From positions 310,001 through 374,000 of the forward strand of contig JAPMXV010000067.1 in NCBI GenBank assembly GCA_026936335.1: 64,000 nucleotides of DNA, read 5' to 3'. This document shows positions 29,864-63,999 of this stretch, piece after piece; position 1 is the stretch's first letter, and each line of letters starts with the position of its first letter. Both the position numbers and the translations under genes were made by a program. The notes under the pieces are model-generated. The model did not search any database. It was not told the DNA's origin and saw nothing but the letters and a program-made list of their open reading frames with translations. Source of the DNA: Mantamonas sphyraenae STR306. Taxonomy: Eukaryota > Protista > CRuMs.

Positions 29864-32800
29864 TCAAGCGTCGCCGACACCCTGACCCTTGGTGGCAGCA
29901 CCGTCTTCGTTGTTGACAGACAGGGTAGCCATCTCGGTCTGCATAGCGTCGTCGAGCTTGCCGCGAGCGCGCAGGTTCTGCAGGATCTGCGCGTCGGTGG
30001 GGCGGTAGTTGCGGAAATAGTAGGAGAGCACGTAGTCGGGGAGCAAGCACATGACAGGCACCAGCAGCAGCATGAGGTAAAAGAGAGGCTGGTCGATCCA
30101 CATGGCCCACACGTTGTACATGTTGGGGAAGGCCTGCAGCGAGTTGAGCACGCTGATGAAAAACACGTAGAAGGCCAGCGAGCCCCAGATGCCAAAGTGT
30201 GTCAACTTTGTCCAGTACTGCGTGACCAGACACAGCTTCAGGGTCACTGTCAGCACGGCGTATGTGCAGGTCAGCGTTCCCATGGACCACATGCCTACAG
30301 ACAGGCCGTCGCTGCGCACAATGTCGTTGAAGTCAAACACGTAGTAGGTGCTGAAGAACAGCACAAACGAGTGCCAGATGGCCGTGCCCAACCAGATGAG
30401 CAGCGAGCGCGCATTGAACATCTTCCCTTGCTGGATCTCCCGGTATGCAAACGGGAAGCGCTGGATGAGCTCCCGGCTCAGATCCTGCTCGAAGCAGCCG
30501 GTCAGGAAGATGGGAAGAGAGGTGAAAAAGATGTTGAACGCAGACAGGAGGTAGGAGTGGTACAACGTCTGGCCCGTCCAGCCGTCGTAGATTGAAAACC
30601 AGAACTGCGGAAAGGTGAAGGCCAGGTTCTTGTAGAACGAGTACTGGATGATCATCACAATGCGCAGGTAGGACCAGCGTCCATGCTTGGCCAGCAGCGG
30701 GCGCAGGTGGCGGAACTCGGTGATGGCGTAGTCCGACGCACGCGCGGCCTGAGTGCCCTCGCGTCCAAAGATGCCCACGCCCACGTGTGCCTCCTGGATC
30801 ATGGACACGTCGTTGGCGCCGTCTCCCACGGACAAACAGATCGTCTTGCCCCAGGTCTTGATGAGACGCACGACCAGCGCCTTTTCCAGGGGGGTCACAC
30901 GGCAACAGATGACACTCTTGCACACGCTGGTCAGCTGCATCAGCAGAGGAGCACGCTCACGCAGGGCCCAGCCCAGCGAACGGCCACCAATCACGAGTGC
31001 GAGCGGGTTCTTGGGCGGCTTGTCCGGGTTGGTGTACATCTTGGCCCACTTGAGAAGCATTTTGCCGACGTCTTCGGTGGCAGGGCCCGCAGGCACTTCC
31101 AGAAGCTCCATGTCGTCCACGAGCAGCTTGGAGCTGTAGCCAATGTTGATGGCCGTCTCCTGCTTGTCGCCCGTGAGCACCCACACGTGGATGTTGCAGT
31201 CCAGCAGGTACTGGATGGTCTCAGCAACCTCCTCCTGCAGCTTGTCCTCGATGGCCGTGGCACCGAGCAACTTAAAGTCACGCTCCATCACATCCGACGC
31301 CGTTTCCATCTTCTGGCGGCGTGCGTCGATGCTGGCGTTGGCTTCAATCCACATGCGTTCCCAGTCCAGGAACTCGCGCTCGGACAGCTCACGCATGCAT
31401 ACAACCAGGGTGCGCAGACCCTCCTTGGCCATGGTGGCCAGGTGCTCGTCTGTGTTGCTCTGCAGCTGCTGGTTCGAGTCGTTGGCCAGGCGGTCAAACA
31501 TGATGTTGTCGGCGCCCTTTGCGTACAAGGTCACGGTGCCGTTCTCATCCCGCACAATGATGCTCATGCGACGACGGGCCGAGGAAAACTCGATGATGGC
31601 CAGCACCTCAAAGATGTGTTCCTGGCCGTGGATTTCCACCGTCAGGGTGGTGGTGGTCTTGCGCGTCAGAGCGTAGCCACACGACTCGGCTGCACGCAGC
31701 AGGGCGGCCTCGTCGGGCGACTGGGCCTGGTAGATGATTTGATCGGTCTTGGGGTCGCGCTCGGGCACGGCGGTGTGGCAGAGGCAAAGGCAGAGCAAAA
31801 AGTGGTGGATTTGAGCCTGCAGCTCTGCGTTGCCGCTTGCGTGTGCACTGGCGATGGTACTGGCAGAGAACATGAGACCATTGATGGAGCACTTGGCAAA
31901 CTCCATCTTGTTTTCCGTCAGGGTGCCGGTCTTGTCTGAAAAGATGTACTCGATCTGGCCGAGCTCCTCGTTGAGGTTGGACGTCTTTGCAGTCATGTGC
32001 ACGACCTGCTTGCCTGCACGTGAGGCATCCAGTTCGATCTTGCCCTTGCTCTTGTTCTTGCGGATCTTGCTCAGGCGCGAGGGCTTCTGGGCAATCAGCG
32101 GGGCGTCGCCCTCGTCAAACTCGGTGGTGAGATCGAGGTCGACCTCCATAAACTTGACCTGCACCAGACGCACCAGCTCAAGGGTAACGACCAGCGAGAT
32201 GGGAATCATGGTGTTGAACAGGATGAAGTAGGTGAAGAAGTTGCGAATGGCAAACTGGACGGGCTCGAGCTCGAGGCCACCGATGTAGCCCATAACGCGC
32301 ACCTCCTGGTCCTGGAAGAAGCCCGAAAAGACGGCGGCGACGAGGCAGCAGGCCATCTGGAAGGCAAAGATGAGGATGACGTACTTGTTGAGGCGGCGCT
32401 CGGTTGTGGAGAGCTTGGAAGGCGAAGGCTGCTGGTTGAGGAAGATCTTTGTGTCGACACCGGTGTAGACAACAATGCCGTAGGCAAAGGCGGTGTTGCG
32501 CAGACGAGCGCCGCGCAGAAGCAGATTCTTTGCGCTGAGGGGCTCGTAGCTGACCACGGCCTGCGAGACCACAGCGCTATCGGCCTCGACACTGGCCATC
32601 TGAGCATGGCTTGGGCGCACGAGCTCGCTGCTGAAGCGGCCATTGAACTCAAAGAGGTGCTCGTTGGGCGGCTCGCAGCTGATACTGCCTTGGATCTGAG
32701 TGACCTCCTGCTCGGTGCGGAAACGCAGAGTCGATGTCATGGAACGGCGCATCTTGAGGTTTGTTTCGCTGCAGATAGACGCGTGCGGGAGGTAGGAGGT

Positions 32801-33664
32801 GTGTGGAGGGTGAACGGGGGAGCGTGTGAGGCGCGCGGACCGGGTTGGGGTGGGGGCGTGGAGCGAGCGGACCGGAGGAGAAAAGAAAAAAACGGCAAAC
32901 GCGCTCAAGGAAGGAAAAACGCACCCGTCAAGATTGGCTGTTTCGATGTAGCAGATGCCTTCATCGTCGTTGCTGCTGACGGTGATCATGTCTGCGGGGA
33001 AAGTCTGGCCTCGCTGGACGTAGACGATGTCTCCCACGACGATGTCCTTGGAGAAAACGGTTTGCAAGGTGCCGTCGCGAAGCACCTCGTACTGGGCGTA
33101 GTTTGTGGCGTGGTCAGCCTTGTAGCGACCCTGTGGTGGGCAACAGGTGAAGCAAGGATGGTCAATGGGCACGAGGGTGAGCATGGGGACGGAGTCGGTT
33201 TGGGGTCGGGGCCGGTGTGGGGCGGGCAAGGAACAAATCGAGCGTATGGGACGACGAGGCCGCAAGGAAGAAAAACGCACGTAGTCCTCGATGGCTTCCT
33301 TGATGGCCGAAAGAGTCAACACAAAGATGAGAGGCACCAAGGAGGTGATGGGTGGTAACGGTGAGATGATTCGGATGGATTGAATAATCACGACGACCAA
33401 AAAGTAGAAGTTGGAGACTCGTCGGAACTGCTCGAAAAGATTCTTGGGCAGGAAGGTGAGTGGGGTGTACTTGGTGGTGCGGATGATGTTGCTCGGGTAG
33501 CCACGCTCATCATTGGCCCGCGAGTTGTTGAACTCGACCATGTAGTCCTCTTCGTCCTGTGTGTGGGCAAGGGTTGTGTGAGGTGTTTGCACGCGGAGGA
33601 AAAAGAGGGGCCCCACAAACCAAAACACTCGGTTCCAACCACATACCATTGCCAGATCCACCAT
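29864..33664 (-). CDS. P4-type ATPase (phospholipid flippase)
   Basis: TTKYT..TFLPKNLFEQF, IETANLDGETNLK, PISL, DKTGTLTEN, SPDE, TGDKQETA and GDGANDVSMIQ. In-frame introns 33557-33646, 33131-33280 and 32769-32924. Confidence 0.95.
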   Translation of the reverse strand: MVDLAMVCGWNRVFWFVGPLFFLRVQTPHTTLAHTQDEEDYMVEFNNSRANDERGYPSNIIRTTKYTPLTFLPKNLFEQFRRVSNFYFLVVVIIQSIRIISPLPPITSLVPLIFVLTLSAIKEAIEDYVRFSSLRPRRPIRSICSLPAPHRPRPQTDSVPMLTLVPIDHPCFTCCPPQGRYKADHATNYAQYEVLRDGTLQTVFSKDIVVGDIVYVQRGQTFPADMITVSSNDDEGICYIETANLDGCVFPSLSAFAVFFFSPPVRSLHAPTPTRSARLTRSPVHPPHTSYLPHASICSETNLKMRRSMTSTLRFRTEQEVTQIQGSISCEPPNEHLFEFNGRFSSELVRPSHAQMASVEADSAVVSQAVVSYEPLSAKNLLLRGARLRNTAFAYGIVVYTGVDTKIFLNQQPSPSKLSTTERRLNKYVILIFAFQMACCLVAAVFSGFFQDQEVRVMGYIGGLELEPVQFAIRNFFTYFILFNTMIPISLVVTLELVRLVQVKFMEVDLDLTTEFDEGDAPLIAQKPSRLSKIRKNKSKGKIELDASRAGKQVVHMTAKTSNLNEELGQIEYIFSDKTGTLTENKMEFAKCSINGLMFSASTIASAHASGNAELQAQIHHFLLCLCLCHTAVPERDPKTDQIIYQAQSPDEAALLRAAESCGYALTRKTTTTLTVEIHGQEHIFEVLAIIEFSSARRRMSIIVRDENGTVTLYAKGADNIMFDRLANDSNQQLQSNTDEHLATMAKEGLRTLVVCMRELSEREFLDWERMWIEANASIDARRQKMETASDVMERDFKLLGATAIEDKLQEEVAETIQYLLDCNIHVWVLTGDKQETAINIGYSSKLLVDDMELLEVPAGPATEDVGKMLLKWAKMYTNPDKPPKNPLALVIGGRSLGWALRERAPLLMQLTSVCKSVICCRVTPLEKALVVRLIKTWGKTICLSVGDGANDVSMIQEAHVGVGIFGREGTQAARASDYAITEFRHLRPLLAKHGRWSYLRIVMIIQYSFYKNLAFTFPQFWFSIYDGWTGQTLYHSYLLSAFNIFFTSLPIFLTGCFEQDLSRELIQRFPFAYREIQQGKMFNARSLLIWLGTAIWHSFVLFFSTYYVFDFNDIVRSDGLSVGMWSMGTLTCTYAVLTVTLKLCLVTQYWTKLTHFGIWGSLAFYVFFISVLNSLQAFPNMYNVWAMWIDQPLFYLMLLLVPVMCLLPDYVLSYYFRNYRPTDAQILQNLRARGKLDDAMQTEMATLSVNNEDGAATKGQGVGDA

Positions 33665-33883
33665 GTTCGAAGCTGGAGCAGAGCGACAAGACGGTGCGGA
33701 GCACAGGACAAGTGGCGATGGGTGCTGTGTCAGTATGTGGCTGGCAAAACGACGAAAGAGAAACCGGTGAGCAAAACGCGTCTGGAGCGTGGCAAACACA
33801 CAGAATGATTCACGTTGACCTGCGAGCGCAGACGCTGCACACACACAATTTCATCGAATTTCCCACGCACATCGCTGCGAATC

Positions 33884-36800
33884 TCACGCAGGCTTGGTCT
33901 GATAGTGGTAGATGTAGCTGCCGAGAAGGATGAAAGCAAAGAGAACGCTGGTGACGCTGATGAGAATCCACAGCGTCTCGAGGCGCAGCGGAGGCTCGTA
34001 GACGTAAACCTTAAAGTAGGCGTCGAGCTCGCACCTGCTCTCGCTGACAAAGACGGCGCGGAAGTGGTAGAGCTGCTCGCCCTCGAAGCGGATGCCATGG
34101 AACTGGGTTGGGTCGAGGACGACGGCGGCCTGTCCGGCGGGATCATTGGCGCAGTTGAGGGTCTCGGTGTGGTTGAAGCAGTAGTCACGACGACCATTGA
34201 TCTCTTCAAGGCGGTACAGGGAGGTGGAGGGCAGCTGGCGGCCATCTTGCTGGATGACAAACTTGGGCGCATAGGCGTTCTGGTAAAACACGCGTTCGAC
34301 CCGATCCACACAGTCTGTGTCACGCGGCAAGTTGGAGAAGCGCAGAGCGTCTGTGCAGCCACACTGAGCTCGGTTGGCCGCGCCTTCACAGCGACCGTAT
34401 TGGCCGGTGCGCTTGGAAATGGACCAAATATCGTTGTGGCGGGGTTTGGATGGGTCGGCATGGTATATGAGCTTAGTGATGGGCACAGCGGTGCCATTGA
34501 TGCTGGGAGGGCGGTAGTTGATGGGCAAGGTCTCTGCGACAGGGGTGCCGTCGGCGGCGGTGAGGTCGCTGTTGAGAAAGTCATCGCGGCTGTACGGGAC
34601 GCTCAGGGCAATGGTTTTGGATGGGGGGCAGCCTACCACCACCGTGCGCACAACCTTGTTCTTGTTGAGACACTGGAGTGAGGGCGAAAGCGTGCTGACG
34701 ATGAGGGAGGTTGTTCCGCTCTCGGCAAAGCTTGTGATGGAGAGATTGAGCAGCTGGTACGACGTGCCGTTGATGGTGGCTCGTACTCGGCCTTGGGTGA
34801 CGCGAACCAGTTTCGGATTGGTGACGCTGACCAGAAACTCGACCGATTCTGGAGCCACGGCAAAGGTGAGCTGAAGGACGTCGCCGACATCCAAGTAAAC
34901 GACGCGGACGCCCTGAAAGGTGGATTCGAGTTCCAGAAACTCGATGACGTCGCAGGTGACCTCACGACGGCTGTACACGCGCTGGCGGGAATGCAGCGGC
35001 CAGGCGTAGGCGTCAAAGCCTGGTTCAGGGTTCCACAGGTGCCACTGACCGGGCGAATACACTGTTGGTTGACCCAGTGAACGGACCACGGCCAGCTGTG
35101 CATGTGTGGTGTTTGCTACGTGTTGTACACGCGCCCATCCGGTGGATGGTACCTCAAGGACCATGCCCACGTGTGCTTGGAGCCAGACAAAGTCGACATC
35201 CGGAACACCGGTGTCAACCACGGCCCACACAGCCCCTGAGGCTTCGGCCGCAAGGAGGCGCAGCTGCTGCCAGGCGACAGCGGCACTGTCGTTGTAGTCG
35301 CGCATGTCGTACAATGCCCACTGCTGTGCAGGGACAGCGGCGTAGGAGCGGGGCACGAGAACAGTGCGCACGTCCATGTGGCTGGCATTGACAAAGCGCA
35401 GGAGCACAAAAGAACCATAATTGGCCACGATAGTCTTTCCCACGTCGGCTGCGGTCCAGCCACAGGTACGATTGGTGGACTGTGCAAGCGAGGCACACAA
35501 GGAGGTCGAACCAGGGTTCCTGAGACGGACGCGCAACAGCTGGCCGACTGCATCTTGGGCCCCGATGCTGGCGGAGCGATTGCCAAAGTCGAGGCCAAAG
35601 CCAAACACGGGACGGCCACTCTCGGGAGCAGGGCTCTCGGACAGAGTGTCGGCCAGGAGACGCAGGGTGCTGATTGCGGCGTCGCTGCGCACAGCCATGT
35701 TGAGACTGGGCTGGCTGGACCGTGAGGACAGGGTGACTGTGGATGCGTCCACGTTTGTGTCTGTGTCTTGTGTGGTGGTGGTGTAGAAGCCGCCAGCCAT
35801 GGCAAGCTGCGTGAGGCGGCGCTGGTTGGGCGAGAGCTGCTCGCCGTGCACGAGAAGGGATCCGCTTTGGGTGGTGAGAATATCGTTGTCCAGCGTGACC
35901 AATGAGCCGTTGGACACGACGCTGCTCCTATGGGTCATGACCGCCATGGCCAGCATGTCTGTGCGTGACAGTGGCATGGCAGCCAGGGCATAGCGTTCAC
36001 TGTCGTAGCGGATGGAGTTTGTGGGCGCCAGGATGGCAGCCTCGGTGGACAGAGCAGTGACGCGCAGCCAGTCTGCGTGCAGGGCCGTTGCACCTGGTGT
36101 GGCCTGGAAGCCCAATGGATAGCGTGACAAGTGTACCCCTGCGTATGAGTGGCGAGGAAAGCGTGCTTCGAGGAGACGCAGGACGCCCAGGTCGTCGTAG
36201 TGGATGGCACGCATGGAGCGGACCTGGACGTCGTCAAAGCCATCGGGCTGGGTGGGCATGGTCACTTGGGCCACTCCAGACGCACCGGGGCAGCTATGGA
36301 TGACGCGACCACGTGTGGTGGAGGCGGCGAAGCAATCGTCAGCACGGTTGGTGGTGACCTCATCAAAGAGCTCGTCGGAGCCCTCGGGAAGTATGTACAG
36401 AAGACGGAAGTTGTAACCCGAGGATGTGGAGAGCCACAGGTGGTTCCCGTAGGCGAGAATGAGTCCGGCAGTGCGTGAGGATTGGACGATGCCACGCGGG
36501 TAGAAGGTGGCAGGGAACCGGAAACCACGATGCCAGCCGACGGTGGTGTTGTCCGATGCATGTTCGTGGAGCAACACCTGTGCCTGATCCGTGCCATTGG
36601 TCACCAGATACACAGAAAGATCGAGGTCGTAGTTGCGCGCCGCGCCCAGAAACCAATGGTTGGTTTCGAGATGGCCGAGGTCCAACGATGTCCATGGGAC
36701 ATGCAGGCGGTACCAGCGGTCGTGGCTGCGTGTGCCACTAAACACCAAATGTGCACCGCGACCCTCCTGTTCAGCCTGCCCTGTGGGTGCCCCAAAAGCC

Positions 36801-38240
36801 AGGTAAACAAACTCCTCGTCACGCTGGTAGACAGACGTGACGCAATAGCGGGCGAAATAGATTGAAAGGGCAGTGGTGGCGTTGATGGAAGAGGACGAGT
36901 CAGTCCATGGCGACAGCTGCTGCACAATGAGGGCAGTGAGATTTGTGGCCAGGGTCTGTGTGACGGAGCTGCCGTGTGGGCGCAACAGGAGTCCGGCAGA
37001 TGTGTGGAGCAGCAAGCCGTTGTTGAGAAAGTGGAGACGGCGCAGAGTGAGAGAGGCACAAAGTGGGTCGTTGGGGGCGGTGGAGAGGTCACACACGGTG
37101 TGGTTTGCACCTGTGAGGAGGTTCAACAAACGAGGCGGCTGCTGAAACGCAGTTTCGGTCTCGGCGACGACCATGCCCAGGCGCTGAGCAGATGAAGAGG
37201 CAGGCACAGAGAAAGAGAGGACGGAGGAGGCTGCTGTGCAGGCGTGGGCGGCGACATGGATATCGATGGGCAGAAGGGCGTCGGAAGCGAGGGTGGAGGC
37301 GTCGTTGAGTGGGGAGCCCCATGAACGCAGAGAATCAAGAGTGCTCACGCTGACCATGGAGTCTGCGACGACGCAACCGAGCACTTGGATGTTGTTGGAT
37401 CGCACAAGGATGTCGATGGGCGAAGCAATCTCGCCCGTGGAGATGGTGGCGCGCCAGTGCGGATCGGAGGCGTTGGTGGTGACCACGGTGAGGGCCGAAA
37501 CGCGCAACGATGTGGCCGAGGTGTCCATGTCGAGGGTGGGAAACTCGCCGACGCGAAGGAAGCTTGTGGTGACCTGTTCGGAGGCACGCAGAGAGGACGG
37601 GTCGACAATGCGCAGACGCACAGCCAGAGACGAGCGGTTTGCAGGCAACACCAGCGTCTGTGTGTTTCCGCTGGAGGTCACACGGGCCGCACTGTCATCT
37701 ACGTCGATGTGAAAGCGGTAGCAGCCTGTGGCAGAGGCGTAAGGAGACAGCGGTGAGGGCAAGAGAGTGTCAGCGGGAGAGAACGGCTTGCAACGGCTGG
37801 GCAGGGACGGGCGAACGGCAGAACGCACCAGAGACGGCACGGACAATGATGTGAAAGACAGCAACTGGACAGGCAGTGCCCGAAGCAAGGAGACCGTGGG
37901 TGGCGGTGTTGTTTGAGTCGCAGAGCATGATACGGGCGGGTTTGACGCCTGTGGAGGAGTAGGTGTGCACGAGGCGGCTGCTTGTACTGGCACGCACGTC
38001 CCACGTGCCGCCAGCCTCGCCGTCGCCGTAATCGAAAGAATAATACAAAGAGCCGTTGCGTGGATGGAAGCTACGCGAGGCATCGAGGACCACAGGACGT
38101 CCGACCTGTGCGATCTGTTCGCCAGAGACTGTGCTGTAGTGTGCACGCAGTACAGGGTCCTGATTTGTGTATGCGCGTGTGTGCGGCACCCAAAGGGCCA
38201 CCACAAGCAGAGCTATGAGAAGCAGGTGTGCCTGCTGCAT
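33884..38240 (-). CDS. CATSPERB: CatSper channel auxiliary subunit beta-like type I membrane protein with N-terminal PKD-like domain (~1417 aa)
   Basis: Signal peptide MQQAHLLLIALLVVALW. CatSper-beta motifs FRFPATF...LAYGNHLWLS.SSG.NF, TLPINYRPPS..G.AVP.T...YHADPSKP, C..A.NRA.CGCT...DC and GEQLYHFR......S.CEL...F.VYV.EPP, then a C-terminal TM helix. Intron 37726-37828. Confidence 0.85.
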
Positions 38241-38288: not shown

Positions 38289-38303
38289 GTTGCCAGAGGC
38301 AAC
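38289..38303. promoter_or_regulatory. RFX X-box-like palindrome GTTGCC-AGA-GGCAAC
   Basis: Fits the consensus GTNRCC(N0-3)RGYAAC exactly. Lies in the 81-bp divergent gap, 48 bp from the CatSper-beta ATG, with a CCAAT motif immediately adjacent (38308-38312). Confidence 0.55.
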
Positions 38304-54488: not shown

Positions 54489-57400
54489 TCATTTCCATGC
54501 GTGGGTGCGACCCTTGCTGCTGTGCCGCAGCGAAGAGGAAGAGGAGGAGGAGGAAGAGGAAGGACGAGTTTGGCGCCTGGGACTGCGAGGCGCAGGGACG
54601 CTGCTTTCGCCAAAGAGGAAGCCAACTTTGATGCTCTGGACGACGTCTTGCTCGTCGTCGTCGTCGTCGGAGGAATCGTCATCGGAACCGTCGTCCGAGG
54701 TGTCCGAGTCAAGGGCAGAGTCTGAGTCGTTGCTGTGGCGACGCTTGTGCGAGGTGTAGTGTACATGCGGGGCAGCAGGTGCAGCAGCAGGGGCAGCGGA
54801 CTGCTGCTGCTGCTGTTGCGTAGGCTTTGCTTCTGCAGGCTGCTTAGGCTGGTCTGCGTTGCGTAGCTGCTCGAGCTCGCGCTTGATCTCCTTGAGCTCG
54901 TCCTTGTCGTGGCGAAGGAGCACATCCTTCTCCGCAGTGGCAATGTACTGCATGCGCATGTTTTCCAGCTCCTCCTTTTCGCGGCGGACCTCTGCGCGCT
55001 CGTGGCGCTCGAGGCGGACACGCAAGGAAGAGATCTCCTGGAGAGCTCTGGTGAGTTTGTCTTTGTACAGTTGGCGGCCTTCGTTGGCCTCGGCAAGCTT
55101 TGTGTGGAGCATGTCGTTGGCAGCCTTCAGGCGTGCGAGTTCGGTCTGCAGCTCGATGCTTGGGTTGAGGTCGACGGTGGCCTTGCGTTGGGATGCGCGG
55201 AAGCGTTCATAGTCAGCTTCGACATCATTGAGGCGAGACTCGGTTTTGACGAGCTTCTCGCGCAGGGTTGCCCTTTCGGCCTGGAGCTCGCTGACTCGGC
55301 CGCGCTCGAGGGTGACCTTGTGTTGAAAGTCATCACGGATGCGCTTGGCGACCTGGGTCAGTTCAAACACCTTTTGGTCTTGATCATGCTTCATGTTGTC
55401 TGCGCGTCGATTCAGCCTTGCCTCGAGCGCCTCGAGATCCTGGGCTTTCTTCTCCACAGCAGCCATGGCGCTCTTGAGCTTCTCCTCCATGCTTGCGTGC
55501 TTGCTCTTCCACTGCTTGTGGGCACTCTCGCGCTCCAGCTCACGCTTTTTCCATTCCTCGCGCAGAGTCTTCATGAGTTCGGCCTCGCGTGCCTGCAGGC
55601 CGTCGAGAAACTCGAGTCGCTGGCGCTCCTTCCAGCGCTCGACCTGCACCTTGGCCTTCTTCTCTGCTTGTTTGATGTTGAACAGCGCCTCTTGTTCCTT
55701 GATTTCTGCCTGCTGCTTGGCAAAGTACTCCTGGGCGAGCAGAGGGAGGCGCATCTTGCCGTCACTGCTCATGGTTTGCCACTTTGGGCCGAAACGCACA
55801 TTGGATTGGCCGGCCTGGGCCTGGAAGGGTTGCTGCGCGTGTTCTTGATGTCTGGTTTGCTCGTAGAGAGGTACAGGTGGGATCTTGGGTTGTTTGTGGT
55901 GCCTTTGGTGCTTGTGGTCGCGTGGTGAGGAGGGGATGTCGGCGGTAGATGAGGATGAAGAGGTCGCGGTGTTGTCTTGCTTGCCCGTGCCGTGCGACTG
56001 CTTGGGTCGCTTTTGCTTTTGCTTGCCTCTGCGATCAGAGGAAGCAGCTGTGGCGTTTTTCTTGGACGCTCTGTGTTCTGCGCGAGCTTGGGCGCCGTAG
56101 AAGCTGTCTTCGAGATGGAGGGAGTTCATGGAGTCGCCCAGCGGGAGGTTGCGGGAGCGGGGATTGTCTCCCATGATGCCACAGTCCTCAAGGCACAAGG
56201 TGACGGTGAGAGAACCGATGCTGCGAGGAGTTTGAAGGTCGGCAAGGTCGCCGCTGTAGGCGGCAATGCTGACTTCTGTCTGGACCATCTGCATGGAGAG
56301 GGCAGGCGGGCGGTCGATGGACTGATCGAGGGCGACGGGAGGGAGGGCGGGCGAACGGAGAACCTCGGCGAGGCTGATTGTGGCAAGGCCGATGCGTTGG
56401 TTGGGGCGGTAGTTGTCAGGGTCTTTGTGGATGACCTCGACAATGAGGGGGACCTCGACGAGAGTCTGCAAGAACTCGTTGGGGTGCATGGCAAATTCAA
56501 AGGCACAGTAGCCGTTGTTGATGGGTGTGGTGCTGTTGTGACCGTTGGTGAGGGCGGCGGGAGGTTGAGCCATCACCGAGGTGGCGGTGCCAAAGTTGGG
56601 GTATGTGTAGCGGCAAAAGAGGTTGAGAGCATGCGGGGCTCCATGGGCGGCCAGATCGTTGATGGATTGGAGCTCAATGGCATACTGAAAGTGGCGAAGA
56701 CCCTTTGCGCGGTGCCAGGTTGGCGCCTGAAGCTGCGGGGTATCTTCTTGATCTTGGAGGTGGTCGTCATCGTCATCGTCATCGTCGTCGTCATGGTCGT
56801 GTGCGGAGGCGGGAGCAGAGGAAGAGTGCCTTAGCTGGCTGCTCTGCAGTTGGTTGTGCTCCTGGTCGACGGCAAAGGAGAAGGCCGAACCGTCGGTGCT
56901 GGAGGAGGTGGAAGAGGCGTTGAGCTTGGTCCACTCGTCGCTGGCAAAAGGAGAGGCGTTGTCCTTGCGTGCGAGGTGGAGGTTGATGGAGATGGAGGAC
57001 TGGCGCGGGTTGGAGGAGTTGGTGAGGATCGAGGTGGGCTGGTCGTCCGAGTTGTGAACGGGTGGTTGGAGAGTCCAGGTGCCGTGGAGGCGCTGGTCGT
57101 CGAGGAGGACGTCCAACGGAAGCACAGCGACAGCGAGGACACGCGAGTCTTGCTTGAGGTTGATGCAGAGGCCGTTGGACGGGGAAAGGGAAGCAAAGTA
57201 GGCGCGAAGCTCGCGAGGCGAAGAGCGCATGGTGACGTGCATGTTCTGAGGCGTGCTGAATTGAATGCTCTTGCTGAGTTCAGAAAACTCTGTGCTGTGC
57301 ATCTCGTGGCCGGCAAACTGGACGGCGAGATGAAAGGGACGGTTGCCGCGGGCTCCGCCGATTTTGTCTGCTTGATGCACCTCTGTGATGTCCAGGGAGA

Positions 57401-58182
57401 ATGAGAATGCCTCGACGCCACGACCAATCTGTACAATGGTGCTGGGCCCCGTGCTCATGGTGCTGAGCTCGGTGACATCTTCGTTGCTCCAGTCTGAGTC
57501 GTAGTCGTCGTCGTCGTCGTCGTCGTCGTTATTGTCGTCGTCGTCTGCAGCGTCCTTTGCACTGCGGCTGCTGCTGCTTCCCCTGGACGGCCCATTGGTG
57601 GATGTGTGTGTTGTACCGTGCGTCATGCTGTTGCTGCCGACCTCTTCCTGAGACTCGGCGCGATCTTCGGCAGTGCTCTGCGCGCCAAAAAATCCAAACG
57701 GATCGTCAGCGGAAACGGCCGGGGCGCGGGGAACAGGCAGGGGAGGATGCGCAGACACAGAGTTTGTCACTCACCTCGCGCAATTCAAACTTGATCTTGA
57801 TCTGGGGAGTCTCGCGCTCCTTGCTGCGCTCGAGCTTGTACCAGCGCGCACTGGTGTTGTTCTTGGCGTTGAGCTCGGCAGAGCGGATGTCCAGCCGCAG
57901 GCCACCGAGGGTGCGCTTGGCGGTGGTGCTCTCGGGTTCGGCGAGCTTGAGGGCCACGCAGTCGACTCGGATCTGCTCGTTGCTGCTCTTGAGCTTCTTG
58001 AGCTGTGCGCGGGACAAGTGCCATCGGAGCGGCTGTGATTTCCAGCTCGGGGTAGAGGAATCCACGGGCCTCGTCTGCTTTGTCTGGCCATTGAAAGTTA
58101 GTTGCAAGGCCATGCCGTGGTTGGCAATACGGGGAAAGCTCTGGCCGCCCACTGCGCGGAATTCGAGAGTGAGTTCGGCCAT
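54489..58182 (-). CDS. CEP120: Centrosomal protein CEP120 (C2 domains + coiled coil)
   Basis: C2A (GQSFP...TFNGQ..QT.PV...L.W...IRVDC...LG.L.LDIRSA...WYKL), third C2 domain (CRYTYPNFGT...NGYCAFEF...PLIVEV.HKD) and coiled coil (ERWKE..., L.EEWKKRE.ERE). Intron 57678-57774. Confidence 0.85.
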
Positions 58183-58293: not shown

Positions 58294-61200
58294 TCACAGA
58301 CCACGGAGGAGTTCACGGATGTCTTCGCTGGCAACAGAGGAGCTGCCGAGGTCGTCGCTGTCTAGGAGATCGCTGAGCGCGACGCTGGCTGCATCGTCAT
58401 CCAGAAGGGCATCGTCGAGGACATCGCCACCGTCGTAGCTCGAAGTGGTGCCAGTGGCTTGGAACCCAGCCATTTGCAGGCGGACAGAGCTGGGCGGGCG
58501 AGTGGAGACGCCGAGGATGTGCTTGCGTTCGACGTTGTCCGACTCGTTCATGGTGGTGCGCAGACGGCGAGCAATGTGCTGGCGTGGATCGTCCCCAGGC
58601 TCCAGGGGAGAGTGCTTGTGTGTGGCAACACTTGCTTCGAGCTCGGCATGGAGCTGGGCGAGCTGTTCCTGCTCTTGCTTGCTCCATTCCTGGACTTCGC
58701 GCGTGTAGTTGGTGCCGTCCTCGAGATGGTACTTCATCACTTCTTCCATGTTGCGCATGGAGCGCGGGTTGTGCATGGTGTACTTGATGGGCATCTTGCG
58801 CGAGGCAGGCGAGGAGGACGTGATGTCATTTGTGCGGTCGCCAAGCACACGCTGCTCCCTCTGGCGTCGCCGCTCCTTCTGCTCTGACTCGAACTGTTCT
58901 TGGATGCGCTTCATGTGTGCTTCATAGCGCCTGGCTGTGGCCGAAACCGCCTCTTGGGGCGTACGCGGCTCGTCGGAGGGTCCCTCGCGGCGTCGAAGCA
59001 CATCTGCGTAGAGGCGATCAATGGCCTGCTGGCGCTGCGCCTCTGACATTCGCTTGCGATTCGACTGTTCCCACGACACGCTACCGGATTGCAAGGGGAG
59101 GGCACCGCGCGACGAGCTGCCCTGCGCGGCTGCGGATCGGTCGAGGGAGTTCAGTCGTCGCAGCACCTCTGCCTGGTCACCGCTTTCGTCCAGATTGGAC
59201 AGAGTGCGAGTGGTGATGTCGTCCTGGTCAAGCTGACCTGCAGCGTTGGCCAGGGCATCGACACGCTCCAGCAGGGTCTCCAGCTTGTTTTTGTGCACCT
59301 CTTCGTGATGTTCGGTGTGGATGTGTGTGAGCGAGTCCAGGGCGCCGAGATCCTGCTCGAGGTCGGTGCCCATGGACTCTGCGGTGCGCTGGATCTCGGC
59401 CAGCTTGTCGGTGATGGACTGGAGACGGTCGCCGAGTTGTCGCTCTCGCTTTTCCTGCGCGGTACCCGGGCGAAGATGGGCATCAATGTCCATTTGATGC
59501 ATGTTTCGACGCACGGCATCGTTGACACGGTCCTCTTGTGCGCGCTGGCGCTCGAGCTGGCGCTCCTTCTCTGCATGCTCGTTTTCCAACTCGCGAAAGG
59601 CATCGAGGATGCGATCTCCGTAGTGGCTCATGCCAGGAATGTGAAGCTCCTGGCTTTGCTGAGCTCCACCTTGTGCACCCTGCTGAGGACTGGGTAGGGG
59701 CTGGTCGCCGTCTTCTGGAACGAGGGAGCCGTCGAGCTCAGCCACAGCAAGAAACGAACTGCCTGGGCTTCCGCCCTGTTGCTGCAAGGCCAGCATAAGA
59801 TCAGACGGAAGCGTGGGCATGAGGTGTTCTGTGATTTGCTGCGCAGCTGCAAGGAGCTCCTGCGTGCCCTTGTACATGTCAGCACGGTCTGCGGGCTGCT
59901 CCGTAGCCGTCTGACGTTGCGGCTCGGGCTGTGTCGGCTCGTTGAGCTTTGGCAGTGGCTGCTGTGCATCCTGAAGTGAAGCATCACTGGTGGTGGTGGA
60001 GGGGCGTGGCGTGGATCGTGCAGCATCTGCCTCTCTGTCACGCCTGCGCTGCTCGGCTGCGTTTTCGTTGTCAGATGAGTTCATGGTACCACGCAGAATG
60101 GTGTCGTACAGCTTTTGGGTGACATCGTCGCGGTTTCCTAGGTTCTCTTCGATCTTGGCCTGCAGCTTTTGCTTCTCAGCCTCAATCTCTGAGATCTGCT
60201 TGTTGCGTTCGGAGATGCGCTTTTCCACCTCGCCGTCCTCGTCAGAGGGAGCCTCATCGTGCTCAGCGGACTTCTCTTCTGGTTCTTCTGGTTCCTCTGG
60301 TTCTTCTTCCTCTTCTTGCGGTGCGGTCTCATTGGCATTGTCGGTTTGAGGAGATGCGGCGAGTTCGTTGTCGGTGGTCGCGTCGGAATGTGAGTCCTCT
60401 TGCTCCTGGGATAGCTCGAGGACGGGCTGTGGCGCACGTGCGGGTACAAGTGCTCCACTCTGGAGCAGTTGCACAATCTGGGCCTGCATCTGCATCATTT
60501 CCGTTTGCTGCTTGCGGAGCAGGGCAAGCTCTGTGGACTCCCGCTCACGGCGTTCTGCGTCCATGTTGTCCTTTGCACGCGGCAGCTTGATAAGCTGCAC
60601 CGATGGCAGTCCATACATCTGCTGAGCCATCTTTGCTCGCGAGCTGCTTGTGGCTACACGTGAAACGCCTCCAGGGGCACCTGAAGGACCGGTGGACAGC
60701 GAGAGCAGCTTGGGGCGGCCTGGTTGCGCTCCCATACGGCCCGTGGATGCAGCTGCGCGTCGAACCATGTTTGGTGGTACATACATCGCCGGCTGAGGAT
60801 TTGCCTGAGGATGAATGGGCATGCTTGCGCCCAGGTAACGGGGGTCGATGGGCGGCAAATGCACGCCCTCCTGCTGGGTGTTTGCCTGAGCCTGGGCGTG
60901 CTCCAGCATGCGTTGCTGCAGCTCATGTTGGCGTTGCACAGCCTCCATCAAACTGGGGGTAGTCTGGGCCCCTGCGGACTGGATGGTGATCGGCGCTTTC
61001 CCTTTGCTGTCAGCAGGGGTCTGCGGCGTTTCGGTGGACTGATGCTTGGGAGTGATGGCTGTCCAGGCATCGCGGCGCTGTGGCGAAGAGGTGTCTGTGT
61101 GCGGATGCATGGGCGAGGTGGCTGTGTTGACGCTGAGAAGGTGCGGCTTGTCCTTCTTTGCCCGCTCGTGTTGGTATTGGTGAAGGCGCTCCTGTGCGGC

Positions 61201-63999
61201 GGCGTACTGCATGACCAGCAGCTGTTCGTTGAGGTCCTTGGGCCGGTGGTTGCTGAGTGCTGAGGAGCTGGAGCTGGAGGAGGACTCGTAGTAGCGATGG
61301 CCGGCGGGCGTGGACGCAGCTCCGCTGGCCATCATCGGGTCCGAGACTGCGCCGGACGAGCTGGAGATGGTCAAATCGCTGATGGAAGAATGCTCTGGCG
61401 TCTCTTCAAGCTCCGGGATGTTTGTATGTGTTCCGTCTTGGCTTTGCGGCGTCTTGGTGGGGGTCTCGAGCACGAGGACCTCCTCCACCTCGTCATCCTC
61501 CAGCTCGGGCTGTTCAGGCGAGGGGTCCACACGATGTGCAGCCACAATCTCTGTGTCTTCCCAGGGAATCTCTTCCATGCCGTCGTCTTCGTCCTCAGGT
61601 TCGAGGGAGGGCGGAGCTTCTTGGGGTAGCGATGGGGCAGGCTGCGGCTCTGGGCTGATGGGCTCCAGATCTGCAGGCTGGACCATGACTACAGCTCCTT
61701 GCTCGTCGTCTTTTGCGTCGTGTTGTGAGTCATCGTGCGGAGACACCGGGCTCTGGATGCGAACAACCTCGTAGACCACCTTGGGCTGGGACGACGTGGA
61801 CTTGGACGGAGTGGCCGAGTCCGCCGGCGAGTCCGAAGGATCGAGTGCGTCATCGCTGACGCTGACGCTGAGGGCGACGGCAGGCGACTTGCCACCGGAG
61901 CGGCGCGTCATGCTGTGTTCCATGCTGTTGCGCAGTGGGCTGGGACTGCCCACGGGGCTGCCACTGCTGTGTGGAGAGTCGCGTGCGTTGGGTGAACGCA
62001 GCACAGTGCGCGTGCTCTCGGAGATGGTGTCCAGAGAACGGTTGCGACGATGCCCTTTCGTTTTGCCGGCGGCTTTTTCACGGCGCACATCCATCGAACG
62101 CGAAAGAAGAGGCATGCTGCCGCGCTTGTGCATGTTTTGAAGCTGTGTCGGGGTGCTGGGAGATAGAGGAAGCGACGATGACTCGTGCCAACTGACACTT
62201 TGGGTAACTGTGCGGACATCTGACGCGCTCGAGGCCATTGCGCCTCCCTGTGCGTCCTCTGCTTCATCCCCGTCCCAATCGCGGTCCAACTGAAAGCCAG
62301 CCGCCTCCATGGGGTCGAGGGGCTTGCGTGGGCTGACAGGAGCGCTATGTGTCGAGGTGATGGAGCGGTTCGCGTTGTTGTTCTTCTCGTCGAGGAAGCG
62401 GGTTTCGTCCATGGAGATGTTGCTGGAGGTGACGCGGTTGACAAAGGACTGCCGAAGGAAAGATTGGGAGGTGGAGGATGTGGCAGCGCTGCGGCTTGCG
62501 CCGGCAAAGTTGTTGCTGGACACACGACGCTGGATGACTGGCCTGCTGAAAATGCTGAGCTTCTCACGCAGATGCGCGAGGCTCTGTCGAACGCCCGTGT
62601 ACGTGTCTGTGTGTGCGCTCGTGATGTCTGTGGTGCGCAGGAGATGGAACATGGCGGTGGCAAAGGCCTGAAAGTCGGGGTCGAACTCAAACTCCCAGTG
62701 GACGGCCGGGCGTGCACCCAGCAGGCGGTCTGCTTCGTAGACGTCGGCAACGGTAAGAAACTCTTCCGAGCTGAACATGGTGTTTGTGTCGACTTCGACC
62801 GGCCGGAGAACGGCGGGCAAGTCACCCGGGAGCTGGCTCTGCAGTTCTTGCAGTTGGCGGCTGACCAGTTTGGACGGAATGACGGACGGGTGCACGTGTC
62901 CACACAGGGTGTCGTACATGGCCTGCACATCGTTGAGCTCCGAGGTGGAGGAGATGGCGACCTGGTGGAGCAGCTTGGACGGCGTAAAGTCGCCAAAGGG
63001 AACCAGCTTGACGGCCCAGGAAGCAATCTTTTGCTGTCTGAGGATGCCATCCTGAGGATCGATGCGGCTGTTGGGGTGGGACAGCTTTTCGCGTGTGCTG
63101 TAGCTGACCATGTCGCGGATATGCATGTACCAGAGGACCCGGAGGAGGACACGCAACGCAGCAAGCATGCGAGGCTGGACAGCGCCGGAGGTGCGGGTGG
63201 ATGAGGATGAGGATGAAGAGGAGGAGGAGGAAGCAGTGGCGGATGACTTTCCGAGTGCCAGGTGGTCACCAGAGATGTGGTCACGAGCGATCTGGTTTTT
63301 GTGTGCGAGCGTGTCCTCGTAGCTTGCGACACAGCTTGCGATCTGCGGTTTGATGATGAAAAGGATCTTGTTGATCACGTGGCGTATGGTATTGCGGGCA
63401 AGGAGTTCCGCGGAGGTCTGGGAGGTGCCTGTGCCAAGGCCGTCTTCGGAGAGGATGTCGCTGTCCTGGGAGGCGAGGCTGAACTGATCGTCGGAGAGAG
63501 GGGCGTTCGAGGCGGAGGCAGAGGAGGAAGAGGAAGAGGAGTTGATGTTTTGGTGGAGGATGGCACCTGCGTCTTCGATCACTTGGTACTCTGTGGCGCT
63601 GAGATCTGTCGCGTCGCTGAGGACCGAGTCTGTGTCGAGCGAGAGGAGAGAATGGTAGGAACGAGCCATGACCGCAATGGTGCGTTCGATGGTGGAGGAG
63701 TCGAGAGAGGCCATCTGGAGGGTGGACTGGTCGAGGAGGGGCGTCTGTGTGGGCAGAGCAAAGTCCGCGGGCACCTGGAGTGGCATGGCGCGGACGAGGC
63801 GGATGAGCTGTTGGAGGTGGTGGAGGACGGAGGTGCGGCGAAATTGAAAGGCGAGGTGGCGCATGTTTGCGTCTTCAGCCATGGCAATGACGCCAATCAT
63901 GTCGCGAAAGTTGTCGCCAATGAGTGCCGAGTTGAGCTTGGCCTGGAGGATCTGCTGGGGTTGACGCATGTGCTGGTCAAAGTCGGCGATGAAGGAAGG
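58294..63999 (-). CDS. CPLANE1: CPLANE1/JBTS17 (C5orf42)-like protein, 5'-truncated
   Basis: Motifs recalled from CPLANE1, in the same order: LWYMHIRDMVSYSTR, WAVKLVPF.DF...L.QVAIS..SEL, WEFEFD.DF, FLAVAELD and LQSITDKLAEIQRTAESM..D. The frame is open to the window edge. Confidence 0.7.
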   Translation of the reverse strand, partial: PSFIADFDQHMRQPQQILQAKLNSALIGDNFRDMIGVIAMAEDANMRHLAFQFRRTSVLHHLQQLIRLVRAMPLQVPADFALPTQTPLLDQSTLQMASLDSSTIERTIAVMARSYHSLLSLDTDSVLSDATDLSATEYQVIEDAGAILHQNINSSSSSSSASASNAPLSDDQFSLASQDSDILSEDGLGTGTSQTSAELLARNTIRHVINKILFIIKPQIASCVASYEDTLAHKNQIARDHISGDHLALGKSSATASSSSSSSSSSSTRTSGAVQPRMLAALRVLLRVLWYMHIRDMVSYSTREKLSHPNSRIDPQDGILRQQKIASWAVKLVPFGDFTPSKLLHQVAISSTSELNDVQAMYDTLCGHVHPSVIPSKLVSRQLQELQSQLPGDLPAVLRPVEVDTNTMFSSEEFLTVADVYEADRLLGARPAVHWEFEFDPDFQAFATAMFHLLRTTDITSAHTDTYTGVRQSLAHLREKLSIFSRPVIQRRVSSNNFAGASRSAATSSTSQSFLRQSFVNRVTSSNISMDETRFLDEKNNNANRSITSTHSAPVSPRKPLDPMEAAGFQLDRDWDGDEAEDAQGGAMASSASDVRTVTQSVSWHESSSLPLSPSTPTQLQNMHKRGSMPLLSRSMDVRREKAAGKTKGHRRNRSLDTISESTRTVLRSPNARDSPHSSGSPVGSPSPLRNSMEHSMTRRSGGKSPAVALSVSVSDDALDPSDSPADSATPSKSTSSQPKVVYEVVRIQSPVSPHDDSQHDAKDDEQGAVVMVQPADLEPISPEPQPAPSLPQEAPPSLEPEDEDDGMEEIPWEDTEIVAAHRVDPSPEQPELEDDEVEEVLVLETPTKTPQSQDGTHTNIPELEETPEHSSISDLTISSSSGAVSDPMMASGAASTPAGHRYYESSSSSSSSALSNHRPKDLNEQLLVMQYAAAQERLHQYQHERAKKDKPHLLSVNTATSPMHPHTDTSSPQRRDAWTAITPKHQSTETPQTPADSKGKAPITIQSAGAQTTPSLMEAVQRQHELQQRMLEHAQAQANTQQEGVHLPPIDPRYLGASMPIHPQANPQPAMYVPPNMVRRAAASTGRMGAQPGRPKLLSLSTGPSGAPGGVSRVATSSSRAKMAQQMYGLPSVQLIKLPRAKDNMDAERRERESTELALLRKQQTEMMQMQAQIVQLLQSGALVPARAPQPVLELSQEQEDSHSDATTDNELAASPQTDNANETAPQEEEEEPEEPEEPEEKSAEHDEAPSDEDGEVEKRISERNKQISEIEAEKQKLQAKIEENLGNRDDVTQKLYDTILRGTMNSSDNENAAEQRRRDREADAARSTPRPSTTTSDASLQDAQQPLPKLNEPTQPEPQRQTATEQPADRADMYKGTQELLAAAQQITEHLMPTLPSDLMLALQQQGGSPGSSFLAVAELDGSLVPEDGDQPLPSPQQGAQGGAQQSQELHIPGMSHYGDRILDAFRELENEHAEKERQLERQRAQEDRVNDAVRRNMHQMDIDAHLRPGTAQEKRERQLGDRLQSITDKLAEIQRTAESMGTDLEQDLGALDSLTHIHTEHHEEVHKNKLETLLERVDALANAAGQLDQDDITTRTLSNLDESGDQAEVLRRLNSLDRSAAAQGSSSRGALPLQSGSVSWEQSNRKRMSEAQRQQAIDRLYADVLRRREGPSDEPRTPQEAVSATARRYEAHMKRIQEQFESEQKERRRQREQRVLGDRTNDITSSSPASRKMPIKYTMHNPRSMRNMEEVMKYHLEDGTNYTREVQEWSKQEQEQLAQLHAELEASVATHKHSPLEPGDDPRQHIARRLRTTMNESDNVERKHILGVSTRPPSSVRLQMAGFQATGTTSSYDGGDVLDDALLDDDAASVALSDLLDSDDLGSSSVASEDIRELLRGL

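What the first reader, a model, noticed from the sequence alone, without database searches (positions are those of the whole stretch)
33884..38240. Full-length CatSper-beta-like subunit in a non-animal flagellate
Seen: a ~1417-aa type I membrane protein carrying several ordered CatSper-beta signature blocks (LAYGNHLWLS, LPINYRPPS...YHADPSKP, C..CGCT..DC, LYHFR..CEL..VYV.EPP plus TM). Known: CatSper is the sperm flagellar Ca2+ channel complex and has been reported in only a scattered set of non-metazoan eukaryotes. Inference: this organism runs a CatSper-type flagellar Ca2+ channel for motility or sensing, which would be a new lineage or context for the system.
Basis: partly seen in the sequence, partly recalled or inferred. 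Interest (0 to 1): 0.85.

Follow-up and report, generated by a model that had tools for sequence, protein, structure and literature searches.

The report
Sperm calcium-channel subunit in gliding protist
This gene encodes a genuine beta subunit of CatSper, the calcium channel that powers animal sperm tails, in the gliding marine flagellate Mantamonas sphyraenae, whose genome also holds all four pore subunits and several partners; the channel was already known to be ancient, but I found no report of it from this branch of eukaryotes or of the extra front-end domain that non-animal versions carry.

Summary
Confirmed. A two-exon minus-strand gene (38240-37829, 37725-33884; 1417 aa) encodes a full-length CatSper-beta: CATSPERB_C 152 bits (cut-off 27), and the predicted fold matches mouse CatSper-beta end to end (Z 32, 743 residues). 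The assembly matches Mantamonas sphyraenae (CRuMs) in size, contig number and longest contig. Its genome also encodes CatSper1-4 (filters TLDNW/TLDQW/TVDGW/TQDGW), gamma, epsilon, theta (TMEM249) and two sAC-like cyclases. No delta, ARMH2 or SLC9C was found (weak negatives); EFCAB9 and eta were not tested. So beta is not an orphan. CatSper in non-animals is published (Thecamonas, chytrids, Aurantiochytrium, Carpediemonas), and I found unannotated betas in Diphylleia (also CRuMs), Gefionella, Chromosphaera, Cyanophora and Chlorokybus. This is a new lineage record of an ancient system, not a new system. Two extras: exon 1 is a PKD domain shared by non-animal betas and absent from 38 animal ones (likely ancestral, lost in animals), and the His-rich N-terminus appears on CatSper3, not CatSper1 (gene model unverified by RNA). 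Function and flagellar location are inferred. This scan noted this gene, gamma and epsilon earlier in the same genome.

The parts
37829..38240 (-). Exon 1: ATG, signal-peptide-like stretch and PKD domain
38172..38240 (-). Predicted signal peptide (about 23 aa; from hydropathy, no dedicated predictor run)
37830..38174 (-). N-terminal PKD domain, shared with non-animal CatSper-beta, not found in animal beta
   Evidence: Pfam PKD_4 32.7 bits, cut-off 27; model pLDDT 87, best matches collagenase PKD domains E=1e-6; distribution
37726..37828 (-). 103-nt GT..AG intron (phase 1), inferred
   Evidence: homologues carry PKD joined directly to the next domain; no RNA check possible
33884..37725 (-). Exon 2: the whole conventional CatSper-beta body, with stop codon
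37334..37723 (-). CatSper-beta N-terminal beta-sandwich domain (approximate limits)
   Evidence: model residue 1 aligns to mouse beta residue 30; conserved G-x-x-P with animal betas
36011..37279 (-). Beta-propeller domain, holding the LAYGNHLWLS block
   Evidence: model residues 149-571 match propellers; weak CATSPERB_2nd hit
35510..35929 (-). Poorly modelled stretch (pLDDT mostly under 50) between propeller and the recognised part of the head; probably a lineage-specific insertion
35291..35488 (-). Recognised part of the head domain
   Evidence: CATSPERB_head E=4e-4, below cut-off; conserved in alignment
33908..34630 (-). CATSPERB C-terminal (stem) domain with NYRPPS and cysteine motifs, ending in the TM helix
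   Evidence: 151.8 bits, cut-off 27
33908..33985 (-). Single C-terminal transmembrane helix, followed by a very short cytosolic tail
38289..38303 (.). X-box-like palindrome about 50 nt upstream of the ATG; function not supported

Best explanation
The gene is the single CatSper-beta orthologue of Mantamonas sphyraenae, inherited vertically from an early eukaryote. SHOWN: sequence, fold and topology of beta; a genome with CatSper1-4, gamma, epsilon and theta. INFERRED from the mouse complex: the secreted ectodomain (PKD, N-terminal domain, propeller, head, Ig-like, stem) joins gamma and epsilon in a canopy over a CatSper1-4 heterotetramer, its single TM helix anchors it beside the pore subunits, and it is needed for assembly; its propeller may link neighbouring channels into rows. 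The pore has aspartate filters in all four subunits and arginine-rich S4 segments in all four, so it should be a voltage-gated Ca2+ channel. It most likely sits in a flagellar membrane and gives Ca2+ pulses that change flagellar or gliding behaviour (stops, turns) in ordinary vegetative cells. The extra PKD domain is an ancestral part of beta that animals lost; I guess it is an outward-facing adhesion or array-spacing module, which is untested.
For: Pfam and PDB sequence hits; AlphaFold pTM 0.75, Foldseek top hits mouse beta (E 3.6e-44) then epsilon, gamma, delta; VIA Z 32.5, 743 residues, rmsd 4.2, next hit Z 18.5. Alpha subunits: C6 best named homologues CatSper4, 43-56% identity, and in the CatSper4 clade; C34 top PDB hit CatSper3 E=2e-42; C54 best single-domain hit CatSper2 E=1e-29; C23 best named homologues sponge CatSper1. 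Gamma at C61, epsilon at C7, TMEM249 at C8. About 15 dynein heavy chains, so a full motile axoneme toolkit. Beta tree places the protein outside the animal and fungal clades as a deep branch; GC3 0.72 against 0.72-0.81 for neighbours. Role of beta in mouse assembly and arrays: PMC13484710, PMC12799140.
Against: No expression or localisation data. No fourth canopy subunit found, no ARMH2, no SLC9C among five NHE-family genes. Mantamonas flagella hardly beat: the posterior one trails, the anterior one is thin and stiff (PMC10492846), so a sperm-like waveform role is not obvious. Deep nodes of the tree are unresolved and the protein does not group with Diphylleia. No non-animal CatSper current is known to me from the papers searched.
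Confidence: 0.75

Rival explanations
1. The complex is real but reserved for a rare, unseen sexual or swimming stage (gamete-like use, as suggested for Carpediemonas), not for everyday gliding cells.
For: CatSper is gamete-specific in animals; the Carpediemonas paper suggests a sexual role; vegetative flagella barely move.
Against: No HAP2/GCS1 found in this genome (weak negative); no sexual stage, cysts or even division was seen in culture of this species; several homologues come from transcriptomes of ordinary cultures (Diphylleia, Gefionella TRINITY models).
Confidence: 0.15
2. The complex assembles but works outside the flagellum (cell body or ventral gliding surface), for example coupling surface contact to Ca2+ entry through the PKD domain.
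For: Gliding cell with near-passive flagella; PKD domains occur in adhesion and surface proteins.
Against: The PKD domain is also present in free-swimming lineages (chytrids, Cyanophora, Diphylleia), so it is not a gliding adaptation; in fungi CatSper is restricted to flagellated groups (PMC13358043).
Confidence: 0.07
3. Beta is an orphan or decaying subunit, or the contig is a contaminant or a recent transfer from an animal or fungus.
For: Low identity (about 20-27%) to all homologues; a poorly modelled insertion.
Against: Uninterrupted 1279-codon exon with all invariant residues kept; seven partner genes on six other contigs; native codon composition and neighbours; outside animal (92) and fungal (96) clades.
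Confidence: 0.03

Closest known systems
Mouse CATSPERB (PDB 7EEB chain E, 9UBW chain E)
   Same: Type I topology, domain order (N-terminal domain, propeller, head, Ig-like, stem, TM), NYRPPS and cysteine motifs; fold aligned over model residues 1-1200 to chain residues 30-1011.
   Different: Extra N-terminal PKD domain; about 300 aa longer with a poorly modelled insertion; about 20% identity; encoded in 2 exons.
Non-animal CatSper-beta (Carpediemonas membranifera, Allomyces macrogynus, Cyanophora paradoxa, chytrids; unannotated Diphylleia rotans, Gefionella okellyi, Chromosphaera perkinsii, Chlorokybus atmophyticus)
   Same: Length 1200-1500 aa, PKD at the N-terminus, same conserved blocks; closest scores E 1e-60 to 1e-81.
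   Different: Only lineage; Mantamonas forms its own deep branch with no supported sister.
CatSper complex of the apusomonad Thecamonas trahens and of Aurantiochytrium limacinum (Cai et al. 2014, cited through PMC5362262 and PMC6660944; full text not held)
   Same: Alpha 1-4 with beta, gamma, epsilon in a unicellular flagellate; delta appears later; no SLC9C.
   Different: Different supergroup (CRuMs); theta detected here; His-rich segment appears on CatSper3.

Membership tests
CATSPERB | CATSPERB_C domain above the Pfam cut-off | tested here: met
   151.8 bits against 27
CATSPERB | Full ectodomain architecture of beta (N-terminal domain, propeller, head, Ig-like, stem) | tested here: met
   Foldseek E 3.6e-44, TM 0.52/0.59; VIA Z 32.5 over 743 residues. 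Pfam N-terminal models alone score below cut-off.
CATSPERB | Closer to beta than to gamma, delta or epsilon | tested here: met
   Fold E-values 1e-44 (beta) against 1e-16 to 1e-12; separate gamma and epsilon genes exist
CATSPERB | Signal peptide and one C-terminal TM helix | tested here: met
   hydropathy; signal peptide by inspection only
CatSper channel complex | Four distinct single-domain pore subunits CatSper1-4 with aspartate filters | tested here: met
   CatSper1 and 2 assignments rest on best hits and C-terminal tails, the small tree did not resolve them
CatSper channel complex | Auxiliary gamma and epsilon | tested here: met
   CATSPERG_C 69.6 bits; CATSPERD-E_C 124 bits plus CATSPERE_NTD2
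CatSper channel complex | Fourth canopy subunit delta (animal complex) | tested here: inconclusive
   not found in three searches, but the same tool missed the gamma propeller; delta is reported to be younger
CatSper channel complex | Theta (TMEM249) | tested here: met
   82 bits against 25
CatSper channel complex | ARMH2 and tau (C2CD6) | tested here: inconclusive
   ARMH2 blank; tau hit only at the cut-off, 24-26 bits, may be another C2 protein
CatSper channel complex | EFCAB9, eta (TMEM262), SLCO6C1 | not tested
   no specific profile or tool-supplied query was at hand
CatSper channel complex | Flagellar localisation, physical assembly, Ca2+ current gated by voltage and pH | not testable with these tools
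   needs proteomics, imaging, electrophysiology
Metazoan CatSper-sNHE-sAC module | SLC9C exchanger with voltage sensor and CNBD | tested here: not met
   five Na+/H+ exchanger genes, none showing VSD or CNBD in the frames read; agrees with PMC6660944
Metazoan CatSper-sNHE-sAC module | Soluble adenylyl cyclase architecture (two cyclase domains plus AAA_16) | tested here: met
   same open frames at C37:213-215 kb and C73:197-200 kb; sequences not read, orthology to ADCY10 not tested

The most novel reading that the evidence does not exclude
Mantamonas keeps an ancestral form of CatSper that differs from the sperm channel in build and control: a canopy made of only three subunit types (beta, gamma, epsilon) with a PKD domain on beta that animals lost, a histidine-rich pH-sensing tail on CatSper3 instead of CatSper1, no sNHE, and a job in a non-beating, gliding flagellum. 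With so few genes, mostly intron-poor, it could be a simpler CatSper to reconstitute than the mammalian one, which has resisted heterologous expression.
Probability: 0.25. Interest if true: 0.75.

Novelty: new member of a known kind. Interest (0 to 1): 0.45.

Why it matters
It fills the CRuMs gap in the distribution of CatSper and, with the malawimonad, ichthyosporean, glaucophyte, streptophyte alga and metamonad homologues found here, supports a multi-subunit CatSper near the root of eukaryotes, long before sperm. The PKD domain shows what the ancestral beta looked like and points to a change on the animal stem. What CatSper does in non-animal cells is an open question (PMC6660944), and a cultured flagellate with a near-complete genome and a compact subunit set makes it testable.

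Tried and rejected
The single long ORF from TTG 38206 (1440 aa) is not the gene start: its first 160 codons lack a signal peptide and overlap the PKD exon in another frame. The spliced protein was not searched as one piece; following the operators' note each exon was searched by reference and the joined step was left out (the 1417-aa length is arithmetic on coordinates). The look-up of sequencing runs listed no RNA run. The idea that the segment after the PKD domain is epsilon-like was rejected: it superposes on the mouse beta N-terminal domain. RFX control through the X-box-like palindrome is not supported: no RFX DNA-binding domain found, the strict motif occurs 14 times genome-wide against 37 for the reversed control, and no strict copy lies upstream of the other subunit genes read. 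Two further single-domain channels with TLEDW filters (C70, C73) group with bacterial-type channels, not CatSper. A metagenome scan for CatSper3 relatives, to see if the His tail is shared, found none. Cai et al. 2014 is not held. The careful beta tree did not finish; the quick tree is cited.

Full report
OBSERVATION. The feature is on the minus strand. A long stop-free frame covers 33884-38206, but the credible start is the ATG at 38240 in another frame, which opens with a hydrophobic signal-like stretch. The joined protein was not used in any search; exons were searched apart. Only one further hydrophobic stretch exists, at the C-terminus, so the topology is type I. No RNA run was listed, so the intron is inferred; homologues from transcriptomes carry the same two parts joined.

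IDENTITY. Exon 2 scores 151.8 bits on CATSPERB_C (cut-off 27), with weak hits to the head and second-domain models. Mouse CatSper-beta is the only hit in solved structures by sequence (E 2.5e-36). A model of the first 1200 residues of exon 2 built on 50 homologues (pLDDT 74.6, pTM 0.75) finds mouse beta first (E 3.6e-44), then epsilon, gamma and delta, and aligns over its whole length (Z 32.5, 743 residues, rmsd 4.2; next unrelated hit Z 18.5). It is therefore a full-length beta, not just a C-terminal match. Residues about 600-740 of the model are low confidence and probably an insertion. It is the only beta in the genome.

ORGANISM. The assembly has 25,061,354 bases in 78 contigs and a contig of 751,365 bases. 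The Mantamonas sphyraenae genome is given as 25.06 Mb, 78 contigs, longest 751.365 kb, 59% GC (PMC10492846). I take the genome to be that one: a marine gliding biflagellate of the CRuMs supergroup. No rRNA check was made.

THE REST OF THE COMPLEX. Among 92 ion-transport matches, four single-domain channels carry CatSper-type filters: C23 TLDNW, C54 TLDQW, C34 TVDGW, C6 TQDGW. C6 has CatSper4 proteins as its best named homologues at 43-56% identity and falls in their clade (97). C34 has mouse CatSper3 as top hit including the C-terminal tail (E 2e-42). C54 has CatSper2 as best single-domain hit (E 1e-29, a lead only). C23 has sponge CatSper1 as best named homologues (E 5e-23) and matches mouse CatSper1 over pore and tail. 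Four-domain Cav channels rank higher in some lists only because four repeats are summed. All four S4 segments are arginine-rich, which suggests clear voltage dependence (inference). Gamma lies at C61 in three frames, epsilon at C7, theta/TMEM249 at C8. Two long frames have the soluble adenylyl cyclase layout. Not found: delta or a second epsilon, ARMH2, SLC9C. These blanks are weak, since the same search missed the gamma propeller. Tau gave a borderline C2 hit. EFCAB9 and eta were not tested. The subunits are scattered; the window's neighbours are a P4-ATPase downstream and a BDP1-like Myb gene head to head.

DISTRIBUTION AND ORIGIN. A profile search found 394 relatives. Named ones include chytrids, Allomyces, Blastocladiella, Rozella, Chromosphaera, Diphylleia (CRuMs), Gefionella, Cyanophora, Chlorokybus, Carpediemonas and two further unnamed-lineage isolates (TZLM strains). 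In a quick ML tree the Mantamonas protein is a long deep branch outside the animal (92) and fungal (96) groups, with no supported sister and not resolved with Diphylleia. Codon composition resembles the neighbours. Contamination or recent transfer is unlikely; old vertical inheritance with many losses fits best, as published for CatSper generally.

THE PKD DOMAIN. Exon 1 matches Pfam PKD_4 above cut-off and folds confidently as a PKD domain (pLDDT 87; best matches collagenase PKD domains). The betas of Diphylleia, Gefionella, Chromosphaera, Cyanophora and Carpediemonas start with the same domain, those of Nematostella and Owenia do not. A profile of this domain hits 34 betas at their N-terminus, including sequences not used to build it, and none of 38 animal betas, 34 of them over 1000 aa (a few of the 38 were assigned to animals from the tree or by score, not by name). 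The simplest reading is an ancestral domain lost on the animal stem after the split from ichthyosporeans. A full-text search for CatSper with 'PKD domain' listed three papers whose titles and abstracts concern other channels; I did not read them, and the library lacks most subscription papers, so 'undescribed' is provisional.

HISTIDINE TAIL. The exon just before S1 of the CatSper3 orthologue has 26 His in 120 codons, with a run of 15 in mixed CAC/CAT codons, while the CatSper1 N-terminal exon has 1 in 109. A 2026 paper states that His enrichment is confined to CatSper1 (PMC13674862). This could be an independent pH sensor. Caveats: His runs also occur in an NHE tail in this genome, the exon is unverified by RNA, and no close CatSper3 homologue could be checked.

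MECHANISM. By homology with the mouse complex, beta is a structural canopy subunit needed for assembly, and beta-beta propeller contacts link channels into rows. The best-supported reading is a voltage-gated, Ca2+-selective CatSper1-4 channel capped by beta, gamma and epsilon in a flagellar membrane, giving Ca2+ signals that alter behaviour. The genome has about 15 dynein heavy chains, yet the posterior flagellum trails and the anterior one is stiff, so the output may be turning, stopping or sensing more than waveform change. [quoted passage not shown] A gamete-only role is a rival; HAP2 was not found (weak). None of the functional steps was tested.

NOVELTY AND SCORE. CatSper outside animals is known (Thecamonas, Allomyces, Aurantiochytrium; Carpediemonas; flagellated fungi). 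No paper held both CatSper and Mantamonas or CRuMs. This is a new member of a known kind in an informative lineage, with an ancestral domain I could not find described and one odd feature on CatSper3. A specialist would be pleased but not very surprised. Interest 0.45.

Noticed in passing
L033:3295-3654 minus (G000:C34, about 360.8-361.2 kb): CatSper3 orthologue has a His-rich N-terminal exon (26 of 120 residues, run of 15), whereas CatSper1 has almost none; the literature places this feature on CatSper1 only.
   Followed up: partly
L039:918-3057 minus (G000:C11, about 65.4-67.6 kb): Voltage-sensor domain followed by PTEN-like phosphatase and C2 domain: a voltage-sensing phosphatase (VSP/TPTE-like), another protein known from sperm tails.
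   Followed up: partly
L045 (G000:C70:54855-55739) and L046 (G000:C73:88083-89067): Two single-domain channels with TLEDW filters that group with bacterial-type (BacNav/EukCat-like) channels, not CatSper.
   Followed up: partly
G000:C46, C60, C4, C11, C39: At least six four-domain Cav/Nav-type channel genes, plus two-pore-like, TRP/PKD2-like and IP3-receptor-like channels: a rich excitability toolkit for a 25-Mb genome.
   Followed up: no
window 38289-38303: Perfect X-box-like palindrome with an adjacent CCAAT box between the beta start and the divergent BDP1-like gene; rare in the window (2 of 100 shuffles) but not enriched genome-wide and no RFX domain found.
   Followed up: yes
G000:C37:213076-214923 and C73:197537-199750: Two soluble-adenylyl-cyclase-like open frames (tandem cyclase domains plus AAA_16).
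   Followed up: partly
L067:938-2085 minus (G000:C29, about 398.2-399.4 kb): C2-domain protein scoring at the cut-off of the CatSper-tau model; may be a distant tau or an unrelated C2 protein.
   Followed up: partly
window 29864-33844 minus: P4-ATPase flippase directly downstream of beta whose introns appear to be in frame and stop-free, giving one long ORF.
   Followed up: no
window 54489-57770 minus and 58294-63969 minus: A Cep120-like centriolar protein, and a 1891-aa ORF with no significant Pfam family.
   Followed up: no
P0073, P0085, P0065, P0105: Unannotated CatSper-beta proteins in EukProt for Diphylleia rotans, Gefionella okellyi, Chromosphaera perkinsii and Chlorokybus atmophyticus; CatSper4 also in Paratrimastix pyriformis and Mesostigma-labelled and other EukProt entries.
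   Followed up: partly
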